A stretch of DNA of 64,000 bases, taken from positions 285,370 to 349,369 of the IMG/VR virus record IMGVR_UViG_3300034104_005687; one strand, given 5' to 3'. Positions 21,279 to 34,801 of this stretch are shown here, piece after piece. The first letter of the stretch is position 1; each line of letters starts with the position of its first letter. The notes beneath the pieces were generated by a model that worked only from the letters and a program-made list of their open reading frames with translations, was not told the origin of the DNA and did no database searches. The position numbers and the translations under genes are program-made.

Positions 21279-22001
21279 ATGAGAGACCATTTGTTAGACC
21301 TAGTACAACACAGCATTGACCTTGGCTGTATCGACATGTTGAAAATTGAGGGCACTGAGACCGAGACCAAAATCATTGGTGTAGGCAATGATCAAAGTGT
21401 GGTGATTGATGGTGTATTCCATCATCCAATTGCTGAGTTTGTGGGATCGTTTGGCATGCCTAATCTGCCCAAACTCAAAACTATTTTGAATCTTGATGAG
21501 TACAAACAAGATGCCAACTTGACCATGAGCCGCAACAACAGCGGTGATCTTGACGGCATTGAATTTGCCAACAAGTCTGGAGACTTTCGCAACACCTATC
21601 GATTCATGGTAGCAAATGTTGTGGCCAGCAAAGTGCCCACACCTAAGTTCCGTGGAGCCAACTGGCACGTTGAATTCCAGCCAGCCGCTGCCAACATTCA
21701 ACGCCTGAAATGGCAAATGAGTGCCAATGCTGAAGAACCCAACTTTCAAACCAAAGTTGAAAACGGCGATTTGAAGTTCAGCTTTGGTGCAGCGGCCACA
21801 CACGCTGGCAACTTTGTGTTTCAATCAGCAGTGACAGGAACACTCAAACGCAGTTGGAATTATCCTGCCGCACAGATTGCCAGCATTTTAGGCAGCAGTG
21901 GCGACAAAACCATGAAACTCAGTGACGATGGTGCTATGCAGATCACTGTGGATTCAGGACTGGCTGTTTACAACTACATCATCCCTGCTCAGACCAAGTA
22001 A
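21279..22001 (+). CDS. Sliding clamp (gp45/PCNA-like)
   Basis: 240 aa, FGMPNLPKLKTIL and YNYIIPA clamp-like patterns, near polymerase; AAGGAG RBS. Confidence 0.7.
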   Translation: MRDHLLDLVQHSIDLGCIDMLKIEGTETETKIIGVGNDQSVVIDGVFHHPIAEFVGSFGMPNLPKLKTILNLDEYKQDANLTMSRNNSGDLDGIEFANKSGDFRNTYRFMVANVVASKVPTPKFRGANWHVEFQPAAANIQRLKWQMSANAEEPNFQTKVENGDLKFSFGAAATHAGNFVFQSAVTGTLKRSWNYPAAQIASILGSSGDKTMKLSDDGAMQITVDSGLAVYNYIIPAQTK

Positions 22002-23635
22002 TGACTGATTCTATTGTTCAAGACAATCTCACAGCCAAGCAGTCAGACTATGCTGTGTTTTTACCAGCTATCTCAGGCTTCTATGCTACCTTTGTAGGAA
22101 AACAAAGGAACGAGCACTATGTGGATCCTGCACGTTTCCCTGCTGGGCTCACAGACATGGAACAGATGAATTGGCTCAACAGCCAAAAAGCCTTGTTTCC
22201 GTATCGTTGGAGTCTGTATTCTGGTGGGCATGCCAACTTGGACTTGAACAAGCAGGACTGGTCAGAGGACATGGTTCGCAACCGAGAGCCCGGCACGTTC
22301 ATCCTAGGCGACTCAGGTGGATTTCAAATTGCCAAAGGCCTGTGGGAAGGCGATTGGAAAGCCAACTCGGGTTGTCCAAAAGCACAAAAGAAACGTGAGT
22401 TGATTCTAAACTGGCTAGACACAGTGGCTGACTACGGAATGATTCTTGATATTCCAACTTGGGTCATTCACGACAAGAAAGCATCAGAAGCCTGTCAGAT
22501 TACCACATTGCAAGAAGCCGTGGATGCCACCAAGTTCAACAACGAATACTTCATGCGTCACCGCAAGGGTGTAAAGAATGGTGGTGCCAAGTTCTTGAAC
22601 GTGTTGCAGGGAGACAACCACACCAGTGCGGATGCATGGTACGAGACCATGAAGGAATATTGTGATCCTGCAAAATATCCAGACACACATTTTGATGGGT
22701 GGTCAATGGGTGGTCAGAACATGTGCGATGTTCATTTGGTGTTGCGACGACTGGTGGCTTTGCGATACGACAACTTGCTGCAACAGGGAGTACATGACTG
22801 GATGCACTTCTTGGGCACATCAAAACTAGAGTGGGCGGTGTTGCTCACTGTTATTCAGAGAGCTGTGAGAAAATATGTCAACCCTGCTTTTACTATCTCT
22901 TTTGATTGTGCTAGTCCATTCCTTGCAACGGCGAACGGGCAAGTCTATTTTGAAAACGTTTTTGAGCACGATTCTAAGTGGTCGTACAGAATGGCGCCGT
23001 CGGCAGACGACAAAAAGTACTCAACAGACACCCGCAAGTGGTCAGACGGAGTAGTACAAGACGGTGTCTATCCACGTTGGGAAGACTCACCAATCAGCAA
23101 CATGCTGAAGATGAAAGACATCTGTATCTACAAGCCAGGTGTGCCCAAAGCAGGTGTTGTTATCACAGAAGAAAACTTCCGTGATCCAGAAATGTATGAT
23201 GTATTGCCTGATGTCAACAAGAACAGCAAGTGGGGTAAGACATCCTGGGACAGTTTCAGTTATGCCTTGCTGATGGGTCACAACGTTTGGATGCATTTGA
23301 CTGCGGTGCAAGAAGCCAACCGACGCTTTGATGCTGGTGAACATCCTGCTATGATGCAACGTTCGGGAGGTGATTACGCCAAGTTTGCGGACATTGTAGA
23401 AGCTATCTTTGCAGCACCAGACCGTGACAGTGCAGAAGCCATAATTGAACACTATGACACATACTGGATGGAGATTGTGGGCACACGCGGATTCAAAGGC
23501 AAAAAGACCAAAAACGCACGTACACAGTTCAACGCATTGTTCAGTTTGGACGAACCCGAGGTTGCACAATCCAATGACGACAGTGTACAATTAGACAACA
23601 ACAAACTCGATCAACTAGAGCAGGATCAACAATGA
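22001..23635 (+). CDS. dpdA: TGT-fold guanine transglycosylase, DpdA-like
   Basis: DSGGFQ, LDIP, NVLQG, HFLG, SFDCAS; folE/queD/queE nearby. Confidence 0.75.
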   Translation: MTDSIVQDNLTAKQSDYAVFLPAISGFYATFVGKQRNEHYVDPARFPAGLTDMEQMNWLNSQKALFPYRWSLYSGGHANLDLNKQDWSEDMVRNREPGTFILGDSGGFQIAKGLWEGDWKANSGCPKAQKKRELILNWLDTVADYGMILDIPTWVIHDKKASEACQITTLQEAVDATKFNNEYFMRHRKGVKNGGAKFLNVLQGDNHTSADAWYETMKEYCDPAKYPDTHFDGWSMGGQNMCDVHLVLRRLVALRYDNLLQQGVHDWMHFLGTSKLEWAVLLTVIQRAVRKYVNPAFTISFDCASPFLATANGQVYFENVFEHDSKWSYRMAPSADDKKYSTDTRKWSDGVVQDGVYPRWEDSPISNMLKMKDICIYKPGVPKAGVVITEENFRDPEMYDVLPDVNKNSKWGKTSWDSFSYALLMGHNVWMHLTAVQEANRRFDAGEHPAMMQRSGGDYAKFADIVEAIFAAPDRDSAEAIIEHYDTYWMEIVGTRGFKGKKTKNARTQFNALFSLDEPEVAQSNDDSVQLDNNKLDQLEQDQQ

Positions 23636-24129
23636 ATCGCAAAGGACACGACCATGTGAATTTTTTCACTGGTACAGAAGTAGAAAAAACTCCTGCATTT
23701 GGCAAACAAACACTGTTTGTGGTAGGTGTGCAAAGTGTCGAAAGTGTTGCACTGAATTTACAAGGCTGCGAACATATCTTTTTTGGAGCCAATCACAGCT
23801 TTGATCCCAAAGACAATCTAGAGTGGGCACGTTGGGAAGGCATGATCGGATACTTTCTTGAGCGTGGTTATTTGTGCAGTTTGGATATTCCCACAAGTGC
23901 TGTAGAGCAATTCAATGACTCGGGCTTGTGCGAATATCGCAACTTTGTGCCACAGATTCGTGTGAGCATTCCGTATATTAAATTGTGGAACTACAACACC
24001 ATGATCAAGATTGACGACAACGATTTTGACGCAACCAATCCCGGCGTATGGACGCACAGCTTGCACAGCCTAATGTCAAAGCGAACGTTCACAGACTGGG
24101 ATCAATACAACAAGGACCAACCTATATGA
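23632..24129 (+). CDS. Hypothetical protein
   Basis: Coupled ORF in operon. Confidence 0.75.
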   Translation: MNRKGHDHVNFFTGTEVEKTPAFGKQTLFVVGVQSVESVALNLQGCEHIFFGANHSFDPKDNLEWARWEGMIGYFLERGYLCSLDIPTSAVEQFNDSGLCEYRNFVPQIRVSIPYIKLWNYNTMIKIDDNDFDATNPGVWTHSLHSLMSKRTFTDWDQYNKDQPI

Positions 24130-24569
24130 ATCAACAACAAAGAGAAACAGTAGAACGCATTATGACTGCGGCAGAGCGTAAAATTTGGATCACGTTTCGC
24201 AAGGAAGGCATTCACTGCTATCCTGCAGCCGCAACTGATCCTGCACTGGCCACAGGCGACGAGTATGATGTGAGCTTTCTTGGCACACCACACCGTCACA
24301 TCTTTCACTTTCGTGTTTGGATCGACGTGATTCACAATGATCGAGACATTGAGTTCATCCAGTTCAAACGCTGGTTAGAGAATCTTTACAGAGACAGTAT
24401 TCTACAGTTGGATTACAAGAGCTGTGAAATGATGGCAGATGATCTATATCTACAGATTGCTGCAAAGTATCCAGATCGTGCGGTCTGGATTGAGGTTGCC
24501 GAAGATGGTGAAAACGGCGCCCTTATAAAGTACGAAACTTACCGCCCTCAACTCAGTGTTAACATTTAA
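24126..24569 (+). CDS. dpdL: QueD-like T-fold protein, DpdL-like (candidate CDG decarboxylase)
   Basis: LGTPHRHIF matches LxxxHRHxF; SCEMMA; EDGENGA. Confidence 0.65.
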   Translation: MNQQQRETVERIMTAAERKIWITFRKEGIHCYPAAATDPALATGDEYDVSFLGTPHRHIFHFRVWIDVIHNDRDIEFIQFKRWLENLYRDSILQLDYKSCEMMADDLYLQIAAKYPDRAVWIEVAEDGENGALIKYETYRPQLSVNI

Positions 24570-24578
24570 GGAAGTATC

Positions 24579-24806
24579 ATGGCCAAGCCTACATTCAAAC
24601 CCAACCAGCGCCTGACTGAGATCTTTGAAGATCTCGAAGTGTTCTTGGAATTCTGCCAAGACTACGGGTATCGTTACAACGAGAGCGATCTCTACAACTT
24701 CAAAAGCTATGCTTGGCAACAGTTTACCAAGTACAGCACCGGCAAGAACGCCAAGAACATGTGGTGGGAAGATGCACGCCGCTTTGCAGGATACCGCCCA
24801 GCATGA
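24579..24806 (+). CDS. Hypothetical protein
   Basis: AAGGA RBS, 75 aa. Confidence 0.7.
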   Translation: MAKPTFKPNQRLTEIFEDLEVFLEFCQDYGYRYNESDLYNFKSYAWQQFTKYSTGKNAKNMWWEDARRFAGYRPA

Positions 24807-26017
24807 GAAAGCTGTTCTACATGGGCTTGGAGAGCTACGAAGCCCGTTACACACTACAGCTCACAGAGTGGAACCGGCGTGTTTTTGAACGCCGTGGCTT
24901 AGACGTTGTGTATGTACCCGGCAACACCATTGACAACACACAGGCCATCTCAGTGGGTCAAGTGTTGGATGCACATGGTCGCAGTTACTTTGCCATGAGC
25001 CAGATGATGAATTTGGTTCAGATGATGAAGAACGGTGATGTCACAGGTGACGATGTGATCTACTTTGAAGACATGTTCCAGCCAGGCTTTGAAAGTCTTG
25101 GCTATATCATGAATCAGATTCCACGTGAACAATGTCCCAAAATCTATGTGCGTTGTTTGGCACAGGCCATTGACCCTGATGACTTTGTGCATGTATGGGG
25201 TATGGCAAAGTGGATGAACTTGTATGAACAAATGGTCAATGAAATGGTGGCTTTCTCGGGGGGTGCAGTATTGGCTACCAATGAGGAAATGGTCGCGCAC
25301 ATGCGCATTGCTGGATGGACTGCTCCAATCTACAACATTTCTGGTCTTGCATTTGGAAAGGCGGAAGTACTGGAGCGGATCGGTGGACTGGAAAAAATCC
25401 AACCGTTTAATCAGCGTTCCCGGAGGGTGGGTTTCGCAGCAAGGTTTGACCAAGAAAAGCAACCTGGCTTCTTTATGGATCTCATTGAAATGTATGGCGA
25501 GCTTACCACGGAGCCATGTGAGTTTGCAATTTACAGTGGCGGACCTTTGCGATCCAACAATCCAGAGTATGTTGAACGTGCCCGCCGTATGGAGGCAGAA
25601 GGCAAACTCCAGATCTATGACAACATAAGCAAGAACGAATACTATGCTCACCTTAACAATACTCGTGTGCTGTTTAATTGTGCTCTACAAGACTGGGTCT
25701 CTAACACAGTTTCCGAGGCTGACACTCTTGGCTGCAATGTTCTTTATCCTGCCTATCGCAGTTTCCCCGAAACTTTTGCAAACGATCCAAACAGGCTTTA
25801 TGTCCCTTGGAGTATAGACGATGCCTACCACAAAATGCAACTACTCTTACGAGAACCGCATCACAACATGGGACTTATTAGCGATTGGAACAATGCCACT
25901 GTGGATCGTGTTGTTGATATCGTTACTGGCATGGGTGAGCAGTGGAATCGAGCGGGCAATCGCTATCGTGACCATGCTGCTCACGAAAAATATCAAGTTG
26001 TAAAGATTGAATCATGA
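24803..26017 (+). CDS. GT-B (GT4-like) glycosyltransferase
   Basis: ARFDQEKQP, EADTLGC..LYP. Confidence 0.75.
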   Translation: MRKLFYMGLESYEARYTLQLTEWNRRVFERRGLDVVYVPGNTIDNTQAISVGQVLDAHGRSYFAMSQMMNLVQMMKNGDVTGDDVIYFEDMFQPGFESLGYIMNQIPREQCPKIYVRCLAQAIDPDDFVHVWGMAKWMNLYEQMVNEMVAFSGGAVLATNEEMVAHMRIAGWTAPIYNISGLAFGKAEVLERIGGLEKIQPFNQRSRRVGFAARFDQEKQPGFFMDLIEMYGELTTEPCEFAIYSGGPLRSNNPEYVERARRMEAEGKLQIYDNISKNEYYAHLNNTRVLFNCALQDWVSNTVSEADTLGCNVLYPAYRSFPETFANDPNRLYVPWSIDDAYHKMQLLLREPHHNMGLISDWNNATVDRVVDIVTGMGEQWNRAGNRYRDHAAHEKYQVVKIES

Positions 26018-26958
26018 ATGTTGTAGTAACAGGCGCTGCTGGCTATATTGGCGGCCAAGTGGCATTGCAGTTGCAAGATGCAGGCCACTCTGTAACAGGC
26101 ATTGACCGCAGACCTTTGCCACAACACCTTCGAGGTATAATGAAGTTTGTGCAAGCAGACTTTGACAGCGACGAGTCCTATAAATTGTTGTTGGATGTGC
26201 AGCCCAATGCTATTGTACATTGTGCCGGTACTAGCCTGGTTGGGCCCAGCATTAAAAAACCTTCAGATTACTACAACAACAATGTGGCCAAGACCCTGCA
26301 CCTGCTTAATTTTATAACACAGGCTTTGCCTCGAACTAGATTTATTTTTAGTTCAAGCGCAGCAGTATACGGTGAACCTATTATGACACCATGTCACGAA
26401 GTTGATCCTTTGCAACCTATCAGTCCCTACGGTCAAAGCAAATTGATGACAGAAATGATCTTGGAGAGCTATCATTGTGCTTATGGGCTGGACTATGTGG
26501 CATTCCGCTACTTCAATGCCTGCGGTGCCGACAGCCAAGCTAGGCATGGACAAGAGACAGGTGCCACGCACATCATTGCCAGGGTGCTGGAAAGCATTAG
26601 AGATCAACAAGATTTTGTGCTCAACGGCATTGACTATGCCACCCCCGACGGAACCTGTGTGCGTGACTATGTGCATGTGGAAGACATTGCTAGAGCACAT
26701 GTCATGGCATTGGATCAGACAGTTCCTGCTGGAGTATACAATCTTGGATCCAACACAGGAACCAGCAACAGAGAAATTATTGACACAGCACAACAGGTCA
26801 CTGGCAGTGCTGTGGTAATTCAAGTAGGCAAAAAGCGAGCAGGCGATCCTCCTGTGCTCACAGCCAGCGCCGCTAAGTTTGAATTGGTTGTAGGTAATTG
26901 GAAACAACACAGCTTGACTGACATGATTCGTCATGCATGGGCCTGGTACAATGTTTGA
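26014..26958 (+). CDS. galE: UDP-glucose 4-epimerase
   Basis: GAAGYIG, FSSSAAVYG, YGQSK, RYFNACG, RDYVHV. Confidence 0.92.
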   Translation: MNVVVTGAAGYIGGQVALQLQDAGHSVTGIDRRPLPQHLRGIMKFVQADFDSDESYKLLLDVQPNAIVHCAGTSLVGPSIKKPSDYYNNNVAKTLHLLNFITQALPRTRFIFSSSAAVYGEPIMTPCHEVDPLQPISPYGQSKLMTEMILESYHCAYGLDYVAFRYFNACGADSQARHGQETGATHIIARVLESIRDQQDFVLNGIDYATPDGTCVRDYVHVEDIARAHVMALDQTVPAGVYNLGSNTGTSNREIIDTAQQVTGSAVVIQVGKKRAGDPPVLTASAAKFELVVGNWKQHSLTDMIRHAWAWYNV

Positions 26959-27535
26959 TAAGATCTTAAAATTTGAACAAGAGTTGGCCGAGTTTACCGG
27001 CGCACCTTATGCCATCATGACCGACTGTTGCACACATGCTATCGAACTGTGCTTGCGACATGACCGGGTGCGTGAAGTGGTGATGACTCCATATACCTAT
27101 CTCAGCATACCTATGACCATGCACAAGTTGGGCATCAAGTATTACTACAAAGAAGAAGAATGGACGGGCGAATATCGTTTTCACGGTACTAGAATCTGGG
27201 ACTCAGCACGAAGACTTGAAAAAGATATGTATCGTGCTGGATCAATGCAGTGCTTGAGTTTTGGATACACCAAGCCCTTGCACATAGGTCGTGGTGGCGC
27301 TATCTTGTTGGACGATTTAGCCGCATACAAAACTATAATTCGTCAACGCTACGATGGTCGAGATCTTGATATCTCGCCCTGGCAAACTCAAAAAACATTT
27401 CATGTGGGCTATCACTACAAACCCACGCCCGAAGAAGCAGAAATTGGCAGTGCGTTGTTGGTAGGTCTGCGGGAAAGCAAACCCAACCCTGTGCCAGTAC
27501 TTTACCCTGACTTACGCAATATAACTATTGTATGA
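26951..27535 (+). CDS. DegT/DnrJ-like sugar aminotransferase (short)
   Basis: CTHAIEL, DSA, SFGYTKPL..GRGG. Confidence 0.75.
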   Translation: MFDKILKFEQELAEFTGAPYAIMTDCCTHAIELCLRHDRVREVVMTPYTYLSIPMTMHKLGIKYYYKEEEWTGEYRFHGTRIWDSARRLEKDMYRAGSMQCLSFGYTKPLHIGRGGAILLDDLAAYKTIIRQRYDGRDLDISPWQTQKTFHVGYHYKPTPEEAEIGSALLVGLRESKPNPVPVLYPDLRNITIV

Positions 27536-28548
27536 ATTGTATACGTCGACAACATTCAGGGTTGCTGCATTATGGTGCATTGCATCTTGCCCCAGGTCAT
27601 ATTGACACTGTGGAACAAGTTGAATCTATAGTGCTCAGAGATCTCAATGACAGTGGTCTAACCATTGATGATTTAAAATCCAATACTTTGTTGTTGGACT
27701 TTAGGTGCGAAGGACAATGTGACAAACTTGTCAAGAATATAATCACATATTTTCGCAGTGTTCCAGTGATGGATATAGCCGTGATATTCAATGCCAAGGT
27801 CAATGTTGATGAGTTAGATTATCTCGCAGTGTCAGATCCCGAAACTCTGGTAGATCATCAACAATGGTTTACTTTGCTAAAACAACATGCATTGATTCAG
27901 GACACAGACTGTGACTTTTTGTGTCTAATGCGTAGACCCAGTCATACCAGGGCAAAACTGGCCAGTCGACTTTTAAAAGAAGTTGGTAGTTTAAGAATCA
28001 GTTTTGGATCTATGTACCAGTCGCCGGGTTGGCTTGTTGACTATCAACATTATTTTTCTGACCACTCATTGCCGTTGTTGTTGGATGGTATAACTGTTAG
28101 AGATCACCGCAAACTGGAGTATCAAGTTGACAGTGCACTATTTAGAAAGTGTGCTGTAAATATCATTGTTGAAAGTTCCAGTCAGACAGGTACAGATAGT
28201 TGGCACAGTATTTTTGTCACAGAAAAAACGTTCAAGGCTTTTGGAATGCTGCAATTGCCAATTTGGTGGGCAGTACCCGGAGTGGTAGACTGTGTGCGAA
28301 ACATGGGATTTGATGTGTTTGACGACATAATTGATCACAGTTACGACCAAGAACACAATGAAGATCTAAGATTTGAAATGTTGATCAAACAGATCAAACA
28401 GTTGGAATCTAAAAATCTTGCACAACTCAGAACTGAATTGATGCCTCGCCTCATAGCCAATTGGGAAACACTTGATCATAAATGCAATGCTAATTTTGGG
28501 CAATTTCGACGCATATTAAAAGATTTAAATCTTGACACTGCAATCTAA
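27532..28548 (+). CDS. Putative GT-B-like phage protein (ET..EK family)
   Basis: FVTEKTFK, GFDVFDDIIDHSYD. Confidence 0.6.
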   Translation: MNCIRRQHSGLLHYGALHLAPGHIDTVEQVESIVLRDLNDSGLTIDDLKSNTLLLDFRCEGQCDKLVKNIITYFRSVPVMDIAVIFNAKVNVDELDYLAVSDPETLVDHQQWFTLLKQHALIQDTDCDFLCLMRRPSHTRAKLASRLLKEVGSLRISFGSMYQSPGWLVDYQHYFSDHSLPLLLDGITVRDHRKLEYQVDSALFRKCAVNIIVESSSQTGTDSWHSIFVTEKTFKAFGMLQLPIWWAVPGVVDCVRNMGFDVFDDIIDHSYDQEHNEDLRFEMLIKQIKQLESKNLAQLRTELMPRLIANWETLDHKCNANFGQFRRILKDLNLDTAI

Positions 28549-28599: not shown

Positions 28600-29421
28600 T
28601 TGACAAAAAACTTTATCCCGCATCCAATCATCCATGCGGATTCAAAAAACAAATTTATACCCAAAAATTACAACATTCCGCTTGAAGAAACAGGCCTAGA
28701 TGCAATGGCAGGCGATGGTGGATACCGAGAAGAAAAGTATCTTGGAAATTACCTTCGTGCAAAGATGAAGCGTGACGGCAAAAGATTTTGGGCAGGTGAC
28801 AACATCAGTGAGTATGTTAACGAACAAGACAAAGAGCAACTGATCGACGAAGCCACAGAAGCATTTGAACTAGTGCTTGACCGTTTGCTGATTGATCGAG
28901 AAACAGATCCCAACTCAAAAGGCACAGCAAGACGACTGGCCAAAATGTACTTTAACGAAATCATGGAAGGTAGATATGAGCCAGAACCAGACGCAACCGC
29001 TTTTCCCAATGACTCAGCGGATCGATATGAAGGAATGCTTGTGGTGCGCAGTGAGCTTCGCAGTATGTGCAGTCATCACCACCAACCTGTCAGTGGCGTT
29101 GCTTATATCGGGATTATTGCCGCTCAAAAGCTCATTGGTCTTAGCAAGTACACTCGTATTGCTCAGTGGTGTGCTCGTCGTGGCACACTACAGGAAGAAC
29201 TTTGTAATGACATTGCCCGCGAGATTTGCAGGGCCACCGATTCAGAAAGCGTAGCAGTATACATTCAGGCCACACACGGTTGCTGTGAGAATCGCGGCAT
29301 TATGGCTCACAGTAGCCTCACACAAACCACAGTACTAAGAGGCGCCTTCAAACAAGACCAAAGTGTCAAGAAGGAATTCTTTGACAACATCAAACTACAA
29401 CAGGACTTTGCACCACGATGA
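28600..29421 (+). CDS. folE: GTP cyclohydrolase I
   Basis: SMCSHHHQP, IGLSK, LQE, HGC..RG. Confidence 0.93.
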   Translation: MTKNFIPHPIIHADSKNKFIPKNYNIPLEETGLDAMAGDGGYREEKYLGNYLRAKMKRDGKRFWAGDNISEYVNEQDKEQLIDEATEAFELVLDRLLIDRETDPNSKGTARRLAKMYFNEIMEGRYEPEPDATAFPNDSADRYEGMLVVRSELRSMCSHHHQPVSGVAYIGIIAAQKLIGLSKYTRIAQWCARRGTLQEELCNDIAREICRATDSESVAVYIQATHGCCENRGIMAHSSLTQTTVLRGAFKQDQSVKKEFFDNIKLQQDFAPR

Positions 29422-29813
29422 CCGATCTTGAACAAGCACAAGCTGCGGGAATCGCCCCGTGGGATTTAAAAGTTGTCGACCTTAGTGATTTTCATGTGAC
29501 TGTGTTTGAAGATCGATATCCTGTTGCTGTTGGGCATCTACTGTTTGTACCCAACTACAACACTCCTACAGTGATAGTAGATGCGTTTGAATCTGCGTTG
29601 GCTCAGGGTAATCGTATGGTGGCCGCGAGCAAATGCGATGCATTTAACATTGGAATCAACATGGGATCAGCAGCAGGTCAGACTGTGATGTATCCGCATG
29701 TGCACTTGATTCCGCGACGCACCGGAGACTGTGCCGACCCTGTGGGCGGAGTGCGTGGCGTAATTACTGGGCAAGCCAACTACAAGCAATCAGGCTATCG
29801 TCAACCTGGATAA
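29418..29813 (+). CDS. HIT family hydrolase
   Basis: GHLLFVP, AGQTVMYPHVHLIPR. Confidence 0.9.
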   Translation: MTDLEQAQAAGIAPWDLKVVDLSDFHVTVFEDRYPVAVGHLLFVPNYNTPTVIVDAFESALAQGNRMVAASKCDAFNIGINMGSAAGQTVMYPHVHLIPRRTGDCADPVGGVRGVITGQANYKQSGYRQPG

Positions 29814-29823
29814 GTACTATCTC

Positions 29824-29862
29824 AGCGGCCTTTCCGGCATTCATCCCGCTATACAAACTCTG
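29824..29862 (+). promoter_or_regulatory. preQ1-I-like riboswitch candidate upstream of queD
   Basis: AGCGG/CCGCT stem, loop ending CATC, A-rich tail ATACAAACT. Confidence 0.4.
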
Positions 29863-29896
29863 CAGGCCTATGCTATAATATACATAGGAGAACACA

Positions 29897-30421
29897 ATGG
29901 CAAAATATCTTTCAACAAAAACTTACGGCAACGACCGCGGACTTTCATGCTGTTTTAGACAGTGGCGCAGTGCTCACAGTCACTGTAGTCTACTGCACGG
30001 ATACTCAATCGGAATCAAGTTGGTGTTTGAATCGGAAACACTAGATGATCGAAACTGGGTCATGGACTTTGGTGGACTCAAGGCATTCAAAGAGTGGAGT
30101 GAATGGCAATTTGATCATACCACTGTGATTGGTCATGATGATCCTCATCTGGCAAAGTTCAAAGAACTGGCTAAGTTGGGCAAGCAGGCAGAAGGCGGTG
30201 TACTAGATCTACGTATTGTAGAAGCAGTAGGTTGCGAAAAGTTTGCCGAACTAGCTTATCGTACAATGGCAGAAATTCTAGAAGCATATCAGCAAGGACA
30301 GGGTTGGACACACCCAGATGGTCGTGTGTTTGAAGCACGTTATCCTGTGGGCGCAGGTGTTAGATTGCGCAGTGTGGAAGTGTTTGAACATGCTGGTAAC
30401 TCAGCAACCTACGAAGGGTGA
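29897..30421 (+). CDS. queD: 6-carboxytetrahydropterin synthase
   Basis: CSLLHGY, VMDFG, FDH, EH..NSATY. Confidence 0.88.
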   Translation: MAKYLSTKTYGNDRGLSCCFRQWRSAHSHCSLLHGYSIGIKLVFESETLDDRNWVMDFGGLKAFKEWSEWQFDHTTVIGHDDPHLAKFKELAKLGKQAEGGVLDLRIVEAVGCEKFAELAYRTMAEILEAYQQGQGWTHPDGRVFEARYPVGAGVRLRSVEVFEHAGNSATYEG

Positions 30422-31260
30422 ACATGAAACCTAAATTTGACATAGCCCTTCTACTGCCCACTCGTGGGCGTACTGAAGCATTGATCACCAGTGTGAAAAG
30501 TGTGTTTGAATTGGCAGACATTCCTGATCGCTTACAGATGCTGTTTGCGTTTGATCGAGATGACGAAATTGGTAAAAAGTTTTTCCAAGATGAAATCCAA
30601 CCTTGGCTGGACGAGAAGAAGTATCACTATACAGCCATGTTGTTTGATACCATGGGCTATGTTGGTCTGCATCGTTACAACAACAAACTGGCAGAAAAAA
30701 CAGACGCCCGGTGGTTGGTAATCTGGAACGATGATGCTATCATGGAAACTCAGGGATGGGATACGGAAATCATGAAGCATCAAGGTGATTTCAAACTGCT
30801 GGCATTTCATACACACAATGATCATCCCTACAGCATCTTTCCTATTTTGCCACGAGAGTGGTACGAATTGCTGGGATATATTAGTCCGCATCCCACACAA
30901 GATGGCTGGCTCAGTCAACAGGCATACATGCTAGACATATGGGAGCGTATTCCTGTGTGGGTCACGCACGATCGACACGATCTTACTGGAAACAATCTCG
31001 ACGAAACTTATAAGAATCGTGTGATGTACGAGGGAAAACCCAATGATCCTCGAGATTTCCACAGTGTGGAACAACTGAGCCTACGTCATCAAGACTGCTT
31101 CAAACTTGCTGCGCATCTTAAACAGAACTACAACAAAGACATGACATTTTTTGAAAACGTATTCAAAGGCACACAAGATCCTTGGGAAAAATTAGCACAG
31201 AACGATGTCAATCAACAGATGGTGCAATTTGACAATCCGCACAAACATTTTAGTAAATAA
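30418..31260 (+). CDS. GT2-like glycosyltransferase
   Basis: LLPTRGR, WNDD. Confidence 0.7.
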   Translation: MNMKPKFDIALLLPTRGRTEALITSVKSVFELADIPDRLQMLFAFDRDDEIGKKFFQDEIQPWLDEKKYHYTAMLFDTMGYVGLHRYNNKLAEKTDARWLVIWNDDAIMETQGWDTEIMKHQGDFKLLAFHTHNDHPYSIFPILPREWYELLGYISPHPTQDGWLSQQAYMLDIWERIPVWVTHDRHDLTGNNLDETYKNRVMYEGKPNDPRDFHSVEQLSLRHQDCFKLAAHLKQNYNKDMTFFENVFKGTQDPWEKLAQNDVNQQMVQFDNPHKHFSK

Positions 31261-31263
31261 CGG

Positions 31264-33261
31264 ATGAAAACAAAAATTGCATGGGTTCAACCCAATTTCC
31301 AACAAGGTCCCAAAGAATTCAACGCATACTACCTACCTTATTCAGCAGGTGTAGTATGGAGTTACAGCCTTCATGATTCTGCCATACGCGATCAGTTCGA
31401 AGTTACCGAGTGGATATGGCGTAGAGAAGCCATTGAGGAAACAGCACAGCGTCTAGCAAAAAATGACATTATAGCATCCAGTGTATATGTATGGAATCAT
31501 CGTTATAACTATGCCCTGTGCAAACGAATAAAAGAAATCAATCCCAACGTGTTGATTGTGATCGGCGGGCCCGAGCCAGCAATCACAGACCCTAAATTGT
31601 TTCTTGACAATCCTTGGATGGACCTGGTAGTGTGCTACGAAGGCGAAATAACTTTCAAGCGTTTGCTACAACATTATCATAACAAAGACTGGGAGTCAGT
31701 GCCGGGCTTGTTGATCAACCAGAACGGCGAAGCAGTAAAAACCCAAGACTCTGAACGTATTGAGGAACTAGGAGATGTTCCTAGTCCGTACCTGGCCGGA
31801 ATTTTTGATGACTTGATAGCTAAACATCCTGAGATCACTTGGCAAGGTACACTGGAAACCAATCGTGGTTGTCCATATGCTTGTACATTCTGTGACTGGG
31901 GCAGTTTGACCTATAACAAAGTCAAAAAGTTTGGCCTGGAGCGTGTGTACGCTGAATTAGAGTGGATGGCACGACGCAACTTTGACTGGATCTCAATCAC
32001 CGACGCCAACTTTGGTATGTTTCCCGAGCGCGATGGTTTGATTGCCGACAAGATCATTGAGTGCCAAGAAAAATACGGATCACCACGTACATTCTCTGTG
32101 GCCTGGGCCAAGAATCAAAAGAAAGAAGTAATTGACATTGTCAAAAAGTTGCTGGACAGCAAAGGCTTCAATCAAGGACTTACACTGAGTGTGCAAAGTC
32201 TTGACTTGGATGTATTAGAAAACATCCGACGCAAAAACATGGAAATGAACAAGCTAGAAGAAGTATTCAGCTTGTGTGACCAACGCAACATTCCTGCCTA
32301 TACAGAATTGATCCTTGGGTTGCCTGGGGAGACCATGGAGACTTGGAAGAAAAACTTTTATGCCTTGTATGATCTAAATCAGCACACTGGCATCACTGTT
32401 TTCCAGGCGCAGTTGTTGGAGAATGCTGAAATGAACTTGCTGCAAAAAAAGCTGTTCAAGATCACTAGCCAACCAGTCACTGACTATTTTGCCGGCAGCT
32501 ACAGTGTAGAACACATTGAAGAAAGCATTGACGTAATCACTGGCACCAAAGATATGCCTACTCCAGTCATGCTGGATGCACAAATTTTTAGTTGGTTTCA
32601 GACTACATTTCACATCAATGGGTTTGCTACCTTGATTGCTAGATTTGTAAACAAGCATCTGGGCATCAGCTACAACGACTACTACGAAGATCTGTTTGCA
32701 TACTGCAAATCAAATGCGTGGATTGCCAAAGAAGAGGCTGAAGCTAGGCAGTATTTTGGAAACTGGATGACCACTGGAAAAATTGATCACCCCAAAATTG
32801 GTGTTGAGATACATGGCTGGAACATTATTCATCGTACCAGCATGAACATGCACAGCGAAAACAAAACTGATGAATTGTATGATTTCATTGAAACATTTTT
32901 GCAAAGATACAATTTGCCACAGGATCTGATTGACAGTGTGATGAAACTGCAACGTTCGTACTATATCAAGTACGATGCTCGAAATCACTATCCAATGGTG
33001 TTGGAACTAGACTACAATATTTGGGATTTTCTCAGCTTTGACCAGCCATTGACCAAGGCCAAAACTCAATACAAATTGGATTTTCCTGAAGACAAAACCA
33101 TGAGTTTCAACAGATTTCTAGAGTTGTTTTATTTTGCTCGTCGTCGAAACTTTGGCAAAGCCACTGTGGACCTTGTGGGCACAACAAGTACCAAGGGAGC
33201 ACAACGTGGTGCAGGCGCAGCAAAAGCACAAGGATCATTCTCAATCAAACAACTGTCATGA
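31264..33261 (+). CDS. B12-binding radical SAM protein
   Basis: IVIGGPE, EGE, RGCPYACTFC, DANFG. Confidence 0.9.
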   Translation: MKTKIAWVQPNFQQGPKEFNAYYLPYSAGVVWSYSLHDSAIRDQFEVTEWIWRREAIEETAQRLAKNDIIASSVYVWNHRYNYALCKRIKEINPNVLIVIGGPEPAITDPKLFLDNPWMDLVVCYEGEITFKRLLQHYHNKDWESVPGLLINQNGEAVKTQDSERIEELGDVPSPYLAGIFDDLIAKHPEITWQGTLETNRGCPYACTFCDWGSLTYNKVKKFGLERVYAELEWMARRNFDWISITDANFGMFPERDGLIADKIIECQEKYGSPRTFSVAWAKNQKKEVIDIVKKLLDSKGFNQGLTLSVQSLDLDVLENIRRKNMEMNKLEEVFSLCDQRNIPAYTELILGLPGETMETWKKNFYALYDLNQHTGITVFQAQLLENAEMNLLQKKLFKITSQPVTDYFAGSYSVEHIEESIDVITGTKDMPTPVMLDAQIFSWFQTTFHINGFATLIARFVNKHLGISYNDYYEDLFAYCKSNAWIAKEEAEARQYFGNWMTTGKIDHPKIGVEIHGWNIIHRTSMNMHSENKTDELYDFIETFLQRYNLPQDLIDSVMKLQRSYYIKYDARNHYPMVLELDYNIWDFLSFDQPLTKAKTQYKLDFPEDKTMSFNRFLELFYFARRRNFGKATVDLVGTTSTKGAQRGAGAAKAQGSFSIKQLS

Positions 33262-33959
33262 CACGACTGTTTACATTTGGATGTAGCTACACTAACTATC
33301 GGTGGAGCACGTGGGCAGACTGCCTTGCCCCAGAATTTGATTACTTTGAGAACTGGGGTCAAGGCGGTGGCGGCAATCATTACATATACAACAGCGTAAT
33401 GGAGGCTGATCAGCGTCATTGTTTTGGTGCAGGCGACACTGTAATTGTATGCTGGTCTACTTTTATGAGAGACGATAGATATGTACAAGGTCGTTGGCAT
33501 ACTCTAGGTGGTATGTTTACTACTCCAATATATCAATCCGAATACTTGAAATCTCATGTAGATGAGCGAGGGTATGTTATACGTGACCTTGCGTTTATTA
33601 AAGGTGTAAAATCATTGTTAGAAACTAAACCTAATCTAACATGGAAATTTCTTAGTCTAGCCAATCTCAAGCTGGGCACTAGGTGCGAGACGGCGCCTGG
33701 CGAACCCAAAGATGTGATGGAAGTGTATGCAAATGTGCTAGATACAATATTGCCCAGCTACCAGGAAACAATATTTAAAAACGGATGGAAACAGGCAGAA
33801 GATCCTCACCCATCTCCCGAAGAACACTTAGCCTATCTGGATACAGTTTTGCCAGGCTGGGTGACAAAACAATCTACTCGTGTTAAAATGTGCGAAGAGA
33901 GTATCAATCTAAATAAAAATCCCCGCAAGCCGGGACTAGCAAAGGTAAAAAGACTATGA
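33258..33959 (+). CDS. SGNH-like hypothetical protein
   Basis: FGCSYT, NWGQGGGGN, DPHP. Confidence 0.55.
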   Translation: MTRLFTFGCSYTNYRWSTWADCLAPEFDYFENWGQGGGGNHYIYNSVMEADQRHCFGAGDTVIVCWSTFMRDDRYVQGRWHTLGGMFTTPIYQSEYLKSHVDERGYVIRDLAFIKGVKSLLETKPNLTWKFLSLANLKLGTRCETAPGEPKDVMEVYANVLDTILPSYQETIFKNGWKQAEDPHPSPEEHLAYLDTVLPGWVTKQSTRVKMCEESINLNKNPRKPGLAKVKRL

Positions 33960-34801
33960 AATTCAAAGTTAGTGAATTATTTTATTCAGCGCAGGGCGAA
34001 GGTCGCTATGTGGGAGTGCCCAGTGTGTTCCTTCGCATGTTTGGCTGCAACTTTACCTGTTCGGGATTTGGCTGCAAGCCTGGAGAAAAAAGCACCGAAG
34101 CAGATGAGGTAGCAAAAACTGTTGAACTGTACAAAACGTTTGAAGAACTACCCTTGGTGAACACTGGCTGCGACAGCTATGCCAGCTGGCATCCTGCGTT
34201 CAAGCACTTGAGCCCAACATATACTGCCGAAGAACTTGTGGACAAAATGGCAGCGATATTGCCCAATGGAGTGTGGCAACAACCCAATGGCAATCCTGTG
34301 CACTTGGTAATCACGGGTGGTGAACCCTTGCTGGGTTGGCAACGTGCTTATCCAGAACTGCTGGACCTGTTGCACGAACGTGGTCTGCGCCACATCACAT
34401 TTGAAACCAATGGTACCCAAGAACTTGGTGCAGAATTCAAACAGTACTTGTTGAATTGGTTTGGTGAGATTACATTTAGTGTAAGTCCAAAGTTGAGTGT
34501 GAGTGGCGAAAGCTGGGATGATGCCATCAAGCCTGATATTGTGTGGGACTACGAAACATACGGCATCACCTACATGAAGTTTGTGGTAGAAAAGATTGCA
34601 GACTTTGATGAACTGGATCGTGCAGTACATCAGTATCGACTGCGTGGGTTTGCTGGTCCTGTGTTTGTGATGCCCGTGGGCGGGGTAGTCAGTGTGTACG
34701 ATGGCAACCGTATCAATGTTGCTGACGAAGCACTGCGTCGAGGTTACTGGTACAGTCCAAGATTGCATGTGGATCTTTGGGGCAATGGTTGGGGGAAATA
34801 A
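33956..34801 (+). CDS. queE: 7-carboxy-7-deazaguanine synthase
   Basis: FYSAQGEG, FLRMFGCNFTC, TGGEP, ETNGT, SPK. Confidence 0.92.
   Translation: MKFKVSELFYSAQGEGRYVGVPSVFLRMFGCNFTCSGFGCKPGEKSTEADEVAKTVELYKTFEELPLVNTGCDSYASWHPAFKHLSPTYTAEELVDKMAAILPNGVWQQPNGNPVHLVITGGEPLLGWQRAYPELLDLLHERGLRHITFETNGTQELGAEFKQYLLNWFGEITFSVSPKLSVSGESWDDAIKPDIVWDYETYGITYMKFVVEKIADFDELDRAVHQYRLRGFAGPVFVMPVGGVVSVYDGNRINVADEALRRGYWYSPRLHVDLWGNGWGK

What the first reader, a model, noticed from the sequence alone, without database searches (positions are those of the whole stretch)
22001..34801. 7-deazaguanine DNA modification pathway without QueC, with DpdL-like protein and adjacent sugar enzymes
Seen: TGT-fold gene, folE, queD, queE and a second T-fold protein with LxxxHRHxF; no queC or queF in this window. 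Known: FolE-QueD-QueE yield CDG, and DpdL-type proteins have been proposed to decarboxylate CDG to 7-deazaguanine in phages. Inference: genomic G is partly replaced by dDG or dCDG. The co-operonic GT-B, GalE and aminotransferase raise the possibility of a further glycosylated base.
Basis: partly seen in the sequence, partly recalled or inferred. Interest (0 to 1): 0.65.

Follow-up and report, generated by a model that had tools for sequence, protein, structure and literature searches.

The report
Phage 7-deazaguanine DNA module with glycosyltransferase
A 349-kb freshwater jumbo phage carries a complete QueC-free gene set for replacing guanine in its DNA with a 7-deazaguanine, and the base-swapping enzyme is consistently paired with a sugar-transferring enzyme, so the final base may carry a sugar that has not been described.

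Summary
Window 22001-34801 encodes a 544-aa TGT-fold protein, a DpdL homologue with the exact LxxxHRHxF motif, FolE, QueD and QueE. The TGT fold rests on an AF2 model (pLDDT 90.6) whose top 50 Foldseek PDB hits are all tRNA-guanine transglycosylases, and catalytic Asp104 and Asp302 are kept. DpdL is 55% identical to ACP17 DpdL and 35% to phiST DpdL.

Pfam searches of the whole 97%-complete genome find no QueC and no QueF. This is the DpdL-type route described by Hutinet et al. 2023, which gives dDG in phage phiST. The backbone is syntenic with Pseudomonas phage PA5oct, whose DNA resists G-site restriction enzymes.

The new part is a GT4-like GT-B glycosyltransferase (24803-26017) and a 165-aa α/β protein (23632-24129). 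Both travel with this DpdA clade:
- 38/38 and 47/48 well-flanked IMG/VR loci carry the GT.
- So do PA5oct, ACP17, Xanthomonas X1, Burkholderia BCSR5 and Synechococcus BUCT-ZZ01.
- In alphaproteobacterial genome loci the GT lies 50-500 bp from the DpdA-like gene.
- It was not detected in phiST.

GalE, a 200-aa DegT-like PLP enzyme, HIT, further GT candidates and a B12 radical-SAM methyltransferase are lineage-variable additions. A glycosylated deazaguanine is plausible (about 0.35-0.4) but unproven. Verdict: new variant of a known kind.

The parts
21261..22001 (+). 246-aa protein, homologue of PA5oct gp170 (a virion protein by MS). It lies immediately upstream of DpdA. Backbone neighbour; role in the module unknown.
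   Evidence: phrog_12062 1.6e-27. Present upstream of DpdA in 77/80 and 80/80 related loci. PA5oct annotation.
22001..23635 (+). Long-form DpdA-like DNA 7-deazaguanine transglycosylase candidate (TGT fold, 544 aa)
   Evidence: AF2 pLDDT 90.6. Foldseek top 50 all TGT, E about 3e-7. The family profile hits only TGT in the PDB, weakly (E 0.24), aligned at DSGG[FY]Q. D104, D302, H269 and S74 are invariant in 83 homologues. 945 cluster representatives at 50% identity. The profile hits PA5oct gp168 at 2e-165, ACP17 gp123 at 2.9e-10 and phiST DpdA3 at 2.6e-4.
23632..24129 (+). 165-aa conserved α/β protein of unknown function ('u165'); its start overlaps the DpdA stop by 4 bp
   Evidence: Present in 38/38 and 36/48 well-flanked loci. 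Homologues are ACP17 gp122 (4.8e-24), the L092 lineage (1.2e-22) and PA5oct at 252640-253137 (42% identity). AF2 pLDDT 90.7. Only middling structural matches, QueE- or STAS-like, Z about 6. hhalign against QueE was negative.
24123..24569 (+). DpdL homologue (QueD-like T-fold paralogue, proposed CDG decarboxylase). The ORF opens at 24048; the start at 24123 is the likely one.
   Evidence: Motif LGTPHRHIF. 55% identical to ACP17 gp125, 57.6% to PA5oct gp166 and 35% to phiST CGPG_00067. phrog_17812 8e-35.
24803..26017 (+). GT4-like GT-B glycosyltransferase candidate, conserved partner of DpdA. The ORF opens at 24713; the ATG at 24803 matches the homologues.
   Evidence: The nearest Atlas clusters carry PF00534, PF13692 and PF20706. 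PF00534 gives a weak hit at window 25397-25864, E 6e-4. R214, E218, K219, E305 and the N-terminal E10/R15/Y16/T17 are at least 98% conserved in 117 homologues with a median identity of 21%. Homologues next to DpdA or DpdL: PA5oct gp167, ACP17 gp124, X1, BCSR5, BUCT-ZZ01 and L092.
26014..26958 (+). UDP-glucose 4-epimerase GalE
   Evidence: TIGR01179 292.3 bits, above the 262.3 cut-off. PF01370 2e-55. Found in 27/38 close and 16/48 distant loci.
26933..27535 (+). Minimal (200-aa) DegT/DnrJ/EryC1-like PLP enzyme
   Evidence: PF01041 1.2e-16. The profile hits sugar aminotransferases in the PDB at 2e-8. K114 in SFGxxKP and D90 are invariant. Found in 30/38 close loci and 1/48 distant loci.
27532..28548 (+). 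338-aa protein of unknown family. Its invariant E214 and xTEK motif recall GT10-type transferases, but that comparison is from memory and was not tested.
   Evidence: No Pfam, PHROG, NCBIfam, PADLOC or PDB sequence match, either alone or as a profile. 322 homologues, none with a Pfam domain.
28600..29421 (+). GTP cyclohydrolase I (FolE) with an N-terminal extension of about 70 aa
   Evidence: PF01227 3.1e-39. phrog_2197 1.8e-45. NF006824 2.3e-39.
29418..29813 (+). HIT-family nucleotide hydrolase/transferase
   Evidence: PF01230 3.2e-8. Found in 13/38 and 22/48 related loci.
29897..30421 (+). QueD-like 6-carboxytetrahydropterin synthase (motif CxxxHGY)
   Evidence: PF01242 1.5e-13. phrog_2389 8.4e-33. 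It is the only PTPS hit in the genome. Alignment.
30418..31260 (+). 280-aa glycosyltransferase candidate; accessory
   Evidence: phrog_14945 'glycosyltransferase' 1.8e-10. Found in 12/80 close loci.
31264..33261 (+). B12-binding radical-SAM enzyme, KedN5-like C-methyltransferase class; accessory
   Evidence: PF02310 plus PF04055. NF033712 269 bits. CPYACTFC cluster motif. Found in 9/80 close loci.
33258..33959 (+). 233-aa protein of unknown function
   Evidence: No family hit. Found in 1/80 loci.
33956..34801 (+). QueE-like radical-SAM 7-carboxy-7-deazaguanine synthase
   Evidence: phrog_2076 1.5e-52. Five NCBIfam QueE models hit at 1e-11 to 1e-13, all below their cut-offs. 34% identical to the Vibrio 2.275.O QueE and 32% to PA5oct gp162. 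C31, C35 and C72 are invariant.
35221..35697 (+). Sugar-phosphate nucleotidyltransferase (RfaE domain II / TagD-like); possible accessory
   Evidence: PF01467 3e-12. TIGR02199 6.8e-22.
35694..36464 (+). DUF6071 protein beginning with GDSH; possible accessory
   Evidence: PF19547 3e-6, 27.5 bits against a cut-off of 27.
37644..38267 (+). MazG-like (PRA-PH) pyrophosphohydrolase. phiST has a MazG-like gene next to its DpdL.
   Evidence: PF01503 5.6e-10. phiST CGPG_00068 annotation.

Best explanation
The locus is a QueC-independent, DpdL-type 7-deazaguanine DNA-modification module of a freshwater, PA5oct-like jumbo phage.

Inferred pathway:
1. FolE turns GTP into dihydroneopterin triphosphate.
2. 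QueD makes 6-carboxytetrahydropterin.
3. QueE rearranges it to 7-carboxy-7-deazaguanine (CDG).
4. There is no QueC, so the pathway cannot go on to preQ0. The QueD paralogue DpdL is the proposed CDG decarboxylase and would give 7-deazaguanine.
5. The 544-aa TGT-fold DpdA-like enzyme, with its catalytic Asp pair conserved, exchanges guanine in replicated phage DNA for the deazapurine. This protects the DNA from G-dependent restriction.

Shown here: the folds, motifs and homologies, the genome-wide absence of QueC and QueF, and conserved synteny.

Inferred: every enzymatic step on DNA.

Beyond the published scheme, the DpdA of this clade works with a conserved GT4-like glycosyltransferase and a 165-aa α/β protein. 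My preferred reading (about 0.35-0.4) is that the glycosyltransferase adds a sugar to the deazaguanine, either on the free base or in DNA. GalE, the mini-DegT, HIT and the nucleotidyltransferase would supply or tailor the donor in this lineage. The extra GT candidates and the B12 radical-SAM methyltransferase would be strain-level decoration.
For: TGT fold and catalytic residues:
- AF2 model, Foldseek hits, invariant residues and PDB profile alignment.

DpdL homology and motif:
-, against the definition in PMC10516641.

Biosynthesis genes:
- FolE, QueD and QueE.
- No QueC, QueF or canonical TGT in the 97%-complete genome.
- None of the 160 related IMG/VR loci has a QueC or QueF homologue, while DpdL is in 38/38 and 47/48 well-flanked loci.

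Link to DNA modification:
- The backbone is syntenic with PA5oct: pol, gp170, gp168, gp167, gp166, gp162, gp160, exonuclease.
- phiST, which has DpdA3, DpdL and FolE/QueD/QueE, has every G replaced by dDG.

GT partnership:
- A GT homologue lies next to DpdA or DpdL in PA5oct, ACP17, X1, BCSR5, BUCT-ZZ01 and L092, in different gene orders.
- In alphaproteobacterial genome loci it lies 50-500 bp from the DpdA-like gene.
- Residues that I recall as the donor-binding Arg/Lys/Glu positions of GT4 enzymes are conserved across 117 homologues.

Other support:
- The genome has no thymidylate-synthase-like gene, so there is no hydroxymethyl-pyrimidine acceptor for a DNA glycosyltransferase.
- Chemical precedent: the GT4-type HuiG N-glycosylates the 2-amino group of a 7-deazapurine base (PMC7439116; bioRxiv 2026.04.15.718813).
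Against: - There are no chemical data for this phage or for any carrier of the GT-containing module.
- DpdL activity has never been shown. Expressing dpdL with dpdA from phiST and ACP17 gave no dDG in E. coli.
- 7-Deazaguanine has no obvious hydroxyl acceptor.
- The DpdA-like protein misses Pfam TGT and the PADLOC DpdA models, and it has no conserved Cys cluster where TGT binds zinc.
- The GT fold rests on language-model features, a sub-threshold Pfam hit and motifs, not on a structure.
- Many co-occurring loci share one phage backbone, so they are not independent observations.
- GalE, HIT, the extra GT candidates and the radical-SAM enzyme differ between 94%-identical relatives. That pattern also fits a surface- or virion-glycan function.
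- The complex prediction for DpdA with the 165-aa protein gave no verdict.
Confidence: 0.75

Rival explanations
1. The DNA carries plain dDG, as in phiST. The GT4-like protein and the sugar genes do something other than modify DNA, for example glycosylate virion proteins or host envelope glycans. Alternatively, the GT-like protein is a non-catalytic or structural helper of DpdA.
For: - phiST reaches 100% dDG with no detectable GT.
- The sugar genes other than the GT-B vary between close relatives.
- The set includes several GT candidates, a nucleotidyltransferase and SGNH-looking proteins, which is typical of glycan clusters.
- A second radical-SAM, methyltransferase and DUF6492 cluster lies nearby at 11674-15390.
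Against: - The GT-B stays within 50 bp to 5.5 kb of DpdA across many lineages and gene orders, including bacterial loci that have no other phage sugar genes.
- Its nucleotide-sugar-binding-type residues are conserved at 17-21% overall identity.
- The genome offers no hydroxymethyl-pyrimidine acceptor for a DNA glycosyltransferase.
Confidence: 0.3
2. DpdA inserts CDG, and the later steps happen on DNA. DpdL, the 165-aa protein and the GT would convert dCDG in situ, for example by decarboxylation or by forming an ester or amide at the carboxylate. The final base would then be a C7-substituted derivative rather than dDG.
For: - Hutinet et al. consider that DpdA3 may insert CDG.
- dCDG occurs in a Sulfolobus virus.
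- A carboxylate would give the GT or the PLP enzyme a chemical handle.
- The mini-DegT is conserved in 30/38 close loci.
Against: - dCDG was not detected in phiST.
- The published DpdL model favours action on the free base.
- There is no ATP-grasp or adenylating enzyme here to activate the carboxylate.
Confidence: 0.1
3. The TGT-fold enzyme acts on tRNA, or the pathway feeds a nucleotide pool or a small molecule. Phage DNA is not modified by base exchange.
For: - The fold is shared with tRNA-guanine transglycosylases.
- BUCT-ZZ01 carries a phosphoribosyltransferase inside its cluster.
- HIT and MazG-like nucleotide enzymes lie in or beside the window's cluster.
Against: - The protein is too diverged from tRNA TGTs to reach Pfam PF01702, and no conserved Cys cluster marks a TGT-type zinc site.
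- It sits next to the DNA polymerase and an exonuclease.
- PA5oct, which has the orthologous set, has G-site restriction-resistant DNA.
- Every phage known to carry 7-deazaguanine in its DNA encodes a DpdA-family protein.
Confidence: 0.05

Closest known systems
Cellulophaga phage phiST dDG system (DpdA3, DpdL, MazG, FolE, QueE, QueD; Hutinet et al., NAR 2023, PMC10516641)
   Same: - FolE, QueD and QueE without QueC.
- A DpdL with LxxxHRHxF, 35% identical.
- A TGT-fold transglycosylase that Pfam misses.
- A MazG-like gene nearby.
- QueD reads CxxxHGY in both.
   Different: - phiST DpdA3 is 259 aa, against 544 aa here, and matches the family profile only at E 2.6e-4.
- phiST has no detectable GT4-like gene or 165-aa protein.
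- phiST has none of the sugar or radical-SAM accessory genes.
Pseudomonas jumbo phage PA5oct (Wroclawvirus), gp159-gp170
   Same: - Syntenic backbone: DNA polymerase, gp170, DpdA-like gp168 (36% identity), GT-like gp167, DpdL gp166 (58%), QueE gp162, exonuclease gp159.
- A homologue of the 165-aa protein lies elsewhere in the genome.
- Its DNA is restriction-resistant at G sites.
   Different: - Within the 25-kb stretch examined, PA5oct has no homologue of GalE, the mini-DegT, HIT, the 338-aa protein, the 280-aa GT candidate or the B12 radical-SAM enzyme.
- Its modified base has not been identified chemically in the papers I could read.
Acidovorax phage ACP17 gp119-gp126 (and Xanthomonas X1, Burkholderia BCSR5, Synechococcus BUCT-ZZ01)
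   Same: A contiguous run of QueD, FolE, 165-aa homologue, DpdA, GT-like, DpdL and QueE. The GT-like gene lies next to DpdL in all four phages.
   Different: - Their backbones are unrelated and smaller (156-227 kb).
- Their DpdA is more distant (E 2.9e-10 to the family profile).
- The gene order differs.
- BUCT-ZZ01 adds a phosphoribosyltransferase.
Huimycin and dapiramicin biosynthesis (HuiG glycosyltransferase)
   Same: A FolE/QueD/QueE-derived 7-deazapurine is combined with a GT4-type glycosyltransferase that puts a sugar on the base's 2-amino group.
   Different: It is a bacterial small-molecule pathway through preQ0 (QueC present) and has no DNA transglycosylase. Sequence relatedness of HuiG to the phage GT was not tested.
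T-even phage glucosyl-hydroxymethylcytosine (α- and β-glucosyltransferases)
   Same: GT-B-fold enzymes glycosylate a non-canonical base in phage DNA after replication, using UDP-sugar. This comparison is from my own knowledge.
   Different: The acceptor there is the hydroxyl of 5-hmC, made at the nucleotide level. The genome here has no thymidylate-synthase-like hydroxymethylase, and the candidate acceptor is a deazapurine.

Membership tests
DpdA / TGT superfamily (DNA 7-deazaguanine transglycosylase) | TGT-type (β/α)8 barrel fold | tested here: met
   AF2 pLDDT 90.6, pTM 0.91. Foldseek PDB top 50 are all TGT, E 3e-7 to 3e-6, TM (target) about 0.5.
DpdA / TGT superfamily (DNA 7-deazaguanine transglycosylase) | Catalytic aspartates (Z. 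mobilis TGT Asp102 in DSGGYQ and the nucleophile Asp280 in FDC) and the base-binding Asp156 | tested here: met
   The HMM alignment to 4dy1 places D104 in GDSGGFQ opposite the TGT DSGGYQ aspartate and LD150 opposite the FD aspartate. D104 and D302 (SFDCA) are invariant and D150 is at least 90% conserved in 83 homologues. The residue numbering of Z. mobilis TGT is from my own knowledge.
DpdA / TGT superfamily (DNA 7-deazaguanine transglycosylase) | Zinc site CxCxxC...H of TGT | tested here: inconclusive
   No invariant or nearly invariant Cys in the family alignment; only H269 is invariant. The site is probably absent. I do not know whether DpdA3-type enzymes need it.
DpdA / TGT superfamily (DNA 7-deazaguanine transglycosylase) | Match to curated family models (Pfam PF01702, PADLOC Dpd models) | tested here: not met
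   No hit at E <= 0.01 for the protein, and none at E <= 1 in the whole genome. phiST DpdA3 and DpdA4 were also found only by HHpred.
DpdA / TGT superfamily (DNA 7-deazaguanine transglycosylase) | Guanine exchange in DNA rather than tRNA | not testable with these tools
   Only indirect support: genomic association with Que genes in several lineages and restriction-resistant DNA in PA5oct.
DpdA3 subfamily (phiST CGPG_00065, Campylobacter phages) | Sequence relatedness to CGPG_00065 | tested here: inconclusive
   The family profile hits CGPG_00065 at E 2.6e-4, 14.6 bits, over about 90 positions, and ACP17 gp123 at 2.9e-10. The protein is twice as long as phiST DpdA3. It is best described as a long-form clade near DpdA3.
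DpdL (proposed CDG decarboxylase) | Signature LxxxHRHxF replacing the CxxxHGH of QueD | tested here: met
   L78-GTP-H82-R-H84-I-F.
DpdL (proposed CDG decarboxylase) | Homology to phiST CGPG_00067 and ACP17 DpdL | tested here: met
   35% identity (2e-9) and 55% identity (9e-38) by tblastn. jackhmmer E-values of 1.6e-29 and 4.1e-55.
DpdL (proposed CDG decarboxylase) | Occurs with DpdA, FolE, QueD and QueE and without QueC | tested here: met
   for this genome; for 160 related loci.
DpdL (proposed CDG decarboxylase) | CDG decarboxylase activity | not testable with these tools
   Also unproven in the literature: heterologous expression gave no dDG.
GT-B glycosyltransferase, GT4-like (Glycos_transf_1 clan) | Match to the family model, or a two-Rossmann-domain fold | tested here: inconclusive
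   PF00534 gives E 6e-4, 17 bits, below the cut-off, over profile positions 8-161 of 172. Atlas feature neighbours carry PF00534, PF13692 and PF20706. The PDB profile search gave only a 0.54 hit to the GT4 WlaC.
GT-B glycosyltransferase, GT4-like (Glycos_transf_1 clan) | Donor-binding Arg/Lys at the start of the C-domain and an E-x7-E-type motif | tested here: met
   R214, E218, K219 and E305 are at least 98% conserved in 117 homologues. Distant members read QETLGIxxxE and the window reads QDWVSNTVSE. Assigning these motifs to donor binding is from my own knowledge of GT4 enzymes.
QueE (CDG synthase, radical SAM) | Three cluster cysteines and the QGEG substrate motif | tested here: met
   SAQGEG; C31, C35 and C72 are invariant across five phage QueE proteins. 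phrog_2076 1.5e-52. The NCBIfam QueE equivalog models hit below their cut-offs.
GalE (UDP-glucose 4-epimerase) | Score above the curated equivalog cut-off; YxxxK | tested here: met
   TIGR01179 292.3 bits against 262.3. SPYGQSK is present in the sequence.

The most novel reading that the evidence does not exclude
The DpdA-like transglycosylase and its GT4-like partner form a two-enzyme system that puts a glycosylated 7-deazaguanine into DNA, for example an N2- or C7-linked hexose or amino-sugar on dDG. This would be a purine hypermodification with no described counterpart. It would be widespread in freshwater jumbo phages, in several cultured phages (PA5oct, ACP17, X1, BCSR5, BUCT-ZZ01) and in alphaproteobacterial prophage-like loci. 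It would also explain why dpdA plus dpdL alone gave no product in E. coli.
Probability: 0.35. Interest if true: 0.85.

Novelty: new variant of a known kind. Interest (0 to 1): 0.62.

Why it matters
7-Deazaguanines are the only known route by which phages replace guanine, and they blunt restriction enzymes. The DpdL branch is the least understood. Its decarboxylase is unproven, and reconstitution from two genes failed.

This locus, with about 160 related loci, points to two further conserved components: a GT4-like transferase and a 165-aa protein. These are concrete candidates for the missing factors. They also split DpdL systems into a GT-less type (phiST, where dDG has been measured) and a GT-bearing type whose product is unknown.

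Several GT-bearing phages are in culture, including the therapy candidate PA5oct, so the question can be tested directly by mass spectrometry and gene deletion. A sugar-bearing deazaguanine would be a new DNA base and a new target class for modification-dependent defences.

Tried and rejected
- **Nucleotide search.** megablast of the region against the phage collection found no match.
- **Family scans of the DpdA-like protein.** Pfam, NCBIfam and PADLOC gave nothing. A single-sequence PDB search also gave nothing.
- **QueC candidate.** The hit at genome position 238420 is NadE (PF02540, 1e-48), not QueC.
- **The 165-aa protein.**
  - The Atlas feature search gave only weak Helicase_C-like neighbours, score 0.9 with about 113 shared features.
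  - Foldseek against the PDB found nothing at E <= 0.001.
  - VIA-align and the Atlas shape search gave middling QueE- and STAS-like matches, Z about 6 and TM 0.6.
  - I considered a cluster-less QueE derivative, but hhalign against phage QueE proteins was negative (probability 0.2). That idea stays a lead only.
- **Complex prediction.** DpdA (residues 1-495) with the 165-aa protein gave no verdict (score 0.00). This is neither evidence for nor against binding.
- **The 338-aa protein.** No family was found by single sequence, by profile against the PDB, or by Pfam scans of 36 homologues. The resemblance to GT10 is from memory and untested.
- **Locus searches that failed.**
  - The search for related loci with the single distant proteins P0186 and P0135 found nothing.
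  - Alignment A9 had no usable conserved stretch.
- **GT-like and DpdA-like profiles in five other DpdL phages.** Neither was detected in RHph_I1_18, Bakedbeans, Ahp1, D479 or phiST. Those calls had no internal positive control, and the DpdA profile did hit phiST weakly in a local search. The absences are therefore provisional.
- **Promoter and terminator scans.** At chance level.
- **Not used or not encountered.** Read laying was not used. No alternative genetic code was needed.

Full report
**Source and setting.** The window is bases 285370-349369 of a single 349,369-bp IMG/VR virus record judged 97% complete. GC content is about 45%. Near-identical sequence is held by lake-water metagenomes from 20 studies. 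No phage in the INPHARED collection is close at the nucleotide level.

The gene order around the finding is family-B DNA polymerase, two small genes, the cluster, then a 5'-3' exonuclease. This order is syntenic with Pseudomonas jumbo phage PA5oct.

**Checking the observation.** From 22001 to 37503 there is an unbroken chain of + strand genes, many with 4-bp overlaps.
- FolE (28600-29421), QueD (29897-30421) and QueE (33956-34801) are recognised by Pfam and PHROGs. QueE keeps the QGEG motif and three invariant cysteines.
- The 'second T-fold protein' is at 24123-24569 and reads L-GTP-HRH-I-F. That is the exact DpdL signature defined by Hutinet et al. (PMC10516641).
- This protein is 55% identical to the ACP17 protein and 35% identical to the phiST protein that those authors named DpdL.

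The 'TGT-fold gene' is the 544-aa ORF at 22001-23635.
- No curated model sees it. Pfam PF01702 finds nothing in the whole genome even at E <= 1.
- It carries GDSGGFQ and SFDCA.
- A profile of 83 homologues finds only tRNA-guanine transglycosylases in the PDB. The match is weak (E 0.24) but aligned at the catalytic motif.
- An AlphaFold2 model (pLDDT 90.6, pTM 0.91) returns TGT structures in all of the top 50 Foldseek rows, E about 3e-7.
- Asp104 and Asp302 are invariant, and Asp150 is conserved in at least 90% of homologues. By my knowledge of Z. mobilis TGT these correspond to Asp102, Asp280 and Asp156. No conserved cysteine cluster marks a zinc site.

QueC and QueF are absent from the whole record. 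The single weak QueC-like hit is an NAD synthase.

**The family of the transglycosylase.** The exhaustive search found 945 cluster representatives at 50% identity with E <= 1e-3. The word search found more than 7,000 relatives, several of them on contigs of 320-365 kb.

The family profile hits:

| Protein | E-value |
|---|---|
| PA5oct gp168 | 2e-165 |
| Vibrio phage 2.275.O NVP2275O_468 | 2e-101 |
| ACP17 gp123 | 2.9e-10 |
| phiST DpdA3 | 2.6e-4 |

(All.) The protein is thus a long-form clade near DpdA3, not a clear member of it.

Members of the clade sit beside different deazaguanine pathways:
- QueC, QueF, a Gat-like amidohydrolase and YhhQ in Vibrio phage 2.275.O.
- QueC in the P0125 lineage.
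- DpdL here.

This is the substrate-shifting behaviour already described for DpdA families.

**What the pathway most likely does.** Established knowledge of queuosine precursor synthesis gives GTP to H2NTP (FolE), then to CPH4 (QueD), then to CDG (QueE). Without QueC the route stops at CDG.

In phiST the same gene set with DpdL gives complete replacement of dG by 2'-deoxy-7-deazaguanosine and no dCDG. PA5oct has orthologues of DpdA, DpdL and QueE in the same order. Its DNA resists five G-containing restriction sites, and it is restricted by nucleases that sense modified G (PMC12191111).

I therefore hold with about 0.75 confidence that this phage replaces G post-replicatively with a 7-deazaguanine made through DpdL. 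The decarboxylase step is inferred. It has never been demonstrated, and co-expressing dpdL with dpdA gave no dDG.

**The conserved partners.** Two genes between DpdA and the sugar genes are not lineage noise.

*The GT-B candidate (24803-26017).*
- Its nearest Atlas clusters are viral Glycos_transf_1 and GT4 families.
- It has a sub-threshold PF00534 hit on its C-terminal half.
- Across 117 homologues with a median identity of 21%, R214, E218, K219 and E305 are nearly invariant, as is an N-terminal E10/R15/Y16/T17 block. I take the first four to be GT4 donor-binding positions.

*The 165-aa protein (23632-24129).* It folds confidently (pLDDT 90.7) into an α/β domain without a convincing known relative.

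*Co-occurrence in IMG/VR loci.* Only loci with at least 5 kb downstream of DpdA are counted.

| Set | DpdA relatedness | DpdL | GT | 165-aa protein | QueC or QueF |
|---|---|---|---|---|---|
| Close | 55-100% identity to the window protein | 38/38 | 38/38 | 38/38 | none |
| Divergent | 27-41% identity to the distant family member P0186 | 47/48 | 47/48 | 36/48 | none |

These loci share a backbone, so they are not independent. The same genes recur, however, on unrelated backbones and in other orders:
- ACP17: 165-aa homologue, DpdA, GT, DpdL, QueE.
- The L092 lineage: DpdL, 165-aa homologue, GT, DpdA.
- Xanthomonas X1: GT, DpdA, DpdL, QueE.
- Burkholderia BCSR5.
- The T4-like cyanophage BUCT-ZZ01, whose GT is 64.5% identical to the window's.
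- PA5oct: gp168, gp167, gp166, with the 165-aa homologue 28 kb away.

In a scan of bacterial genomes, 20 loci have a GT homologue. Six of them look like binned phage contigs with the full gene set. In the other fourteen, mostly alphaproteobacterial, the GT lies about 50-500 bp from the DpdA-like gene in eleven (none of which has DpdL) and within about 1.1 kb in the rest.

Five DpdL phages showed no GT homologue, among them phiST, where plain dDG was measured. Those searches lacked a positive control.

**Interpretation of the partners.** The primary partnership is DpdA with the GT. DpdL systems come in a GT-less form (dDG known) and a GT-bearing form (product unknown). The genome has no thymidylate-synthase-like hydroxymethylase, so it offers no hydroxymethyl-pyrimidine acceptor of the kind T-even phage glucosyltransferases use.

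A GT4-type enzyme that N-glycosylates the 2-amino group of a 7-deazapurine is known from huimycin biosynthesis. My own chemical reasoning adds that the electron-rich C7 freed by decarboxylation could accept a C-glycosyl or methyl group.

I put about 0.35-0.4 on a glycosylated deazaguanine, about 0.3 on plain dDG with the GT doing something else, and smaller weights on in-DNA processing of dCDG or a non-DNA target.

**Accessory genes.**
- GalE passes its equivalog cut-off.
- The 200-aa DegT-like protein keeps the PLP lysine and aspartate and is conserved at that length. It is a real minimal enzyme, not a fragment. It is common in the close set (30/38) and rare in the distant set (1/48).
- HIT, a 280-aa GT candidate, a KedN5-like B12 radical-SAM C-methyltransferase, a 233-aa unknown, an RfaE/TagD-like nucleotidyltransferase and a DUF6071 protein are patchy.
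- Relatives whose DpdA is 94% identical swap some of these for other dehydratase- or epimerase-like genes and a different radical-SAM enzyme.

This variability fits donor-sugar diversification. It equally fits an unrelated glycan function inserted in a permissive region.

**Novelty and verdict.** The core (a DpdL-type, QueC-less deazaguanine module) is known in kind from 2023. A deazaguanine system in PA5oct was noted in 2021 and 2025. I found no paper in the library that describes the GT4-like and 165-aa partners, the split of DpdL systems by GT presence, or the long-form DpdA clade. I rate the finding a new variant of a known kind, with interest 0.62. The decisive experiment, nucleoside mass spectrometry on cultured carriers, is straightforward.

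Noticed in passing
window 29897-30421; L008:4778-5254; L009:4478-4972: The QueD proteins of DpdL-bearing phages (this one, ACP17, phiST) read CxxxHGY instead of the canonical CxxxHGH. The QueC/QueF-bearing Vibrio phage 2.275.O keeps HGH. DpdL supplies an HRH at the same position, which raises the idea of mixed T-fold oligomers.
   Followed up: no
window 21261-22001: This 246-aa gene is a homologue of PA5oct gp170, which MS detected in virions. It lies directly upstream of the DpdA-like gene in 77/80 and 80/80 related IMG/VR loci, and also in Vibrio phage 2.275.O.
   Followed up: partly
window 11674-15390, minus strand: A second small cluster holds a radical-SAM/SPASM protein (350 aa), a methyltransferase (199 aa), a DUF6492 protein (338 aa) and a 352-aa unknown. 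It may be another modification or glycan module. In relatives a similar radical-SAM gene is on the + strand.
   Followed up: no
L175 (Synechococcus phage BUCT-ZZ01) 3584-11043: This T4-like cyanophage carries QueE, a xanthine-guanine phosphoribosyltransferase, QueD, FolE, two unknowns, DpdL and a GT that is 64.5% identical to the window's. The high identity suggests gene transfer among freshwater phages. The phosphoribosyltransferase hints at a possible nucleotide-level branch.
   Followed up: partly
L186-L261 (bacterial genome loci): Many alphaproteobacterial genome loci (Sphingomonas, Rhizobium, Shinella, Azospirillum, roseobacters), some on complete chromosomes, and some Limnohabitans and Polynucleobacter contigs carry a DpdA-like gene of this clade with no Que genes nearby. 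These are probably prophage-like elements that use host precursors. Eleven have the GT homologue beside the DpdA-like gene but no DpdL.
   Followed up: partly
window 37644-38267: A MazG-like (PRA-PH) pyrophosphohydrolase lies just downstream of the exonuclease. phiST has a MazG-like gene directly beside its DpdL.
   Followed up: no
window 17614-20280: The family-B DNA polymerase is a single 888-aa ORF here. In PA5oct the orthologue is split by a homing endonuclease, and in the P0125 lineage an intein-like piece interrupts it.
   Followed up: no
L005:14886-15734 and L006:15296-16144: In relatives whose DpdA is 94% identical, a 282-aa radical-SAM protein unrelated to QueE sits between the GT-B and GalE genes. 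The window has no gene at that position.
   Followed up: no
window 15901-16344; genome C1:238294-239160: The phage encodes a ferritin-like protein (PF00210, 2.7e-18) and an NAD synthase NadE (PF02540, 1.3e-48).
   Followed up: no
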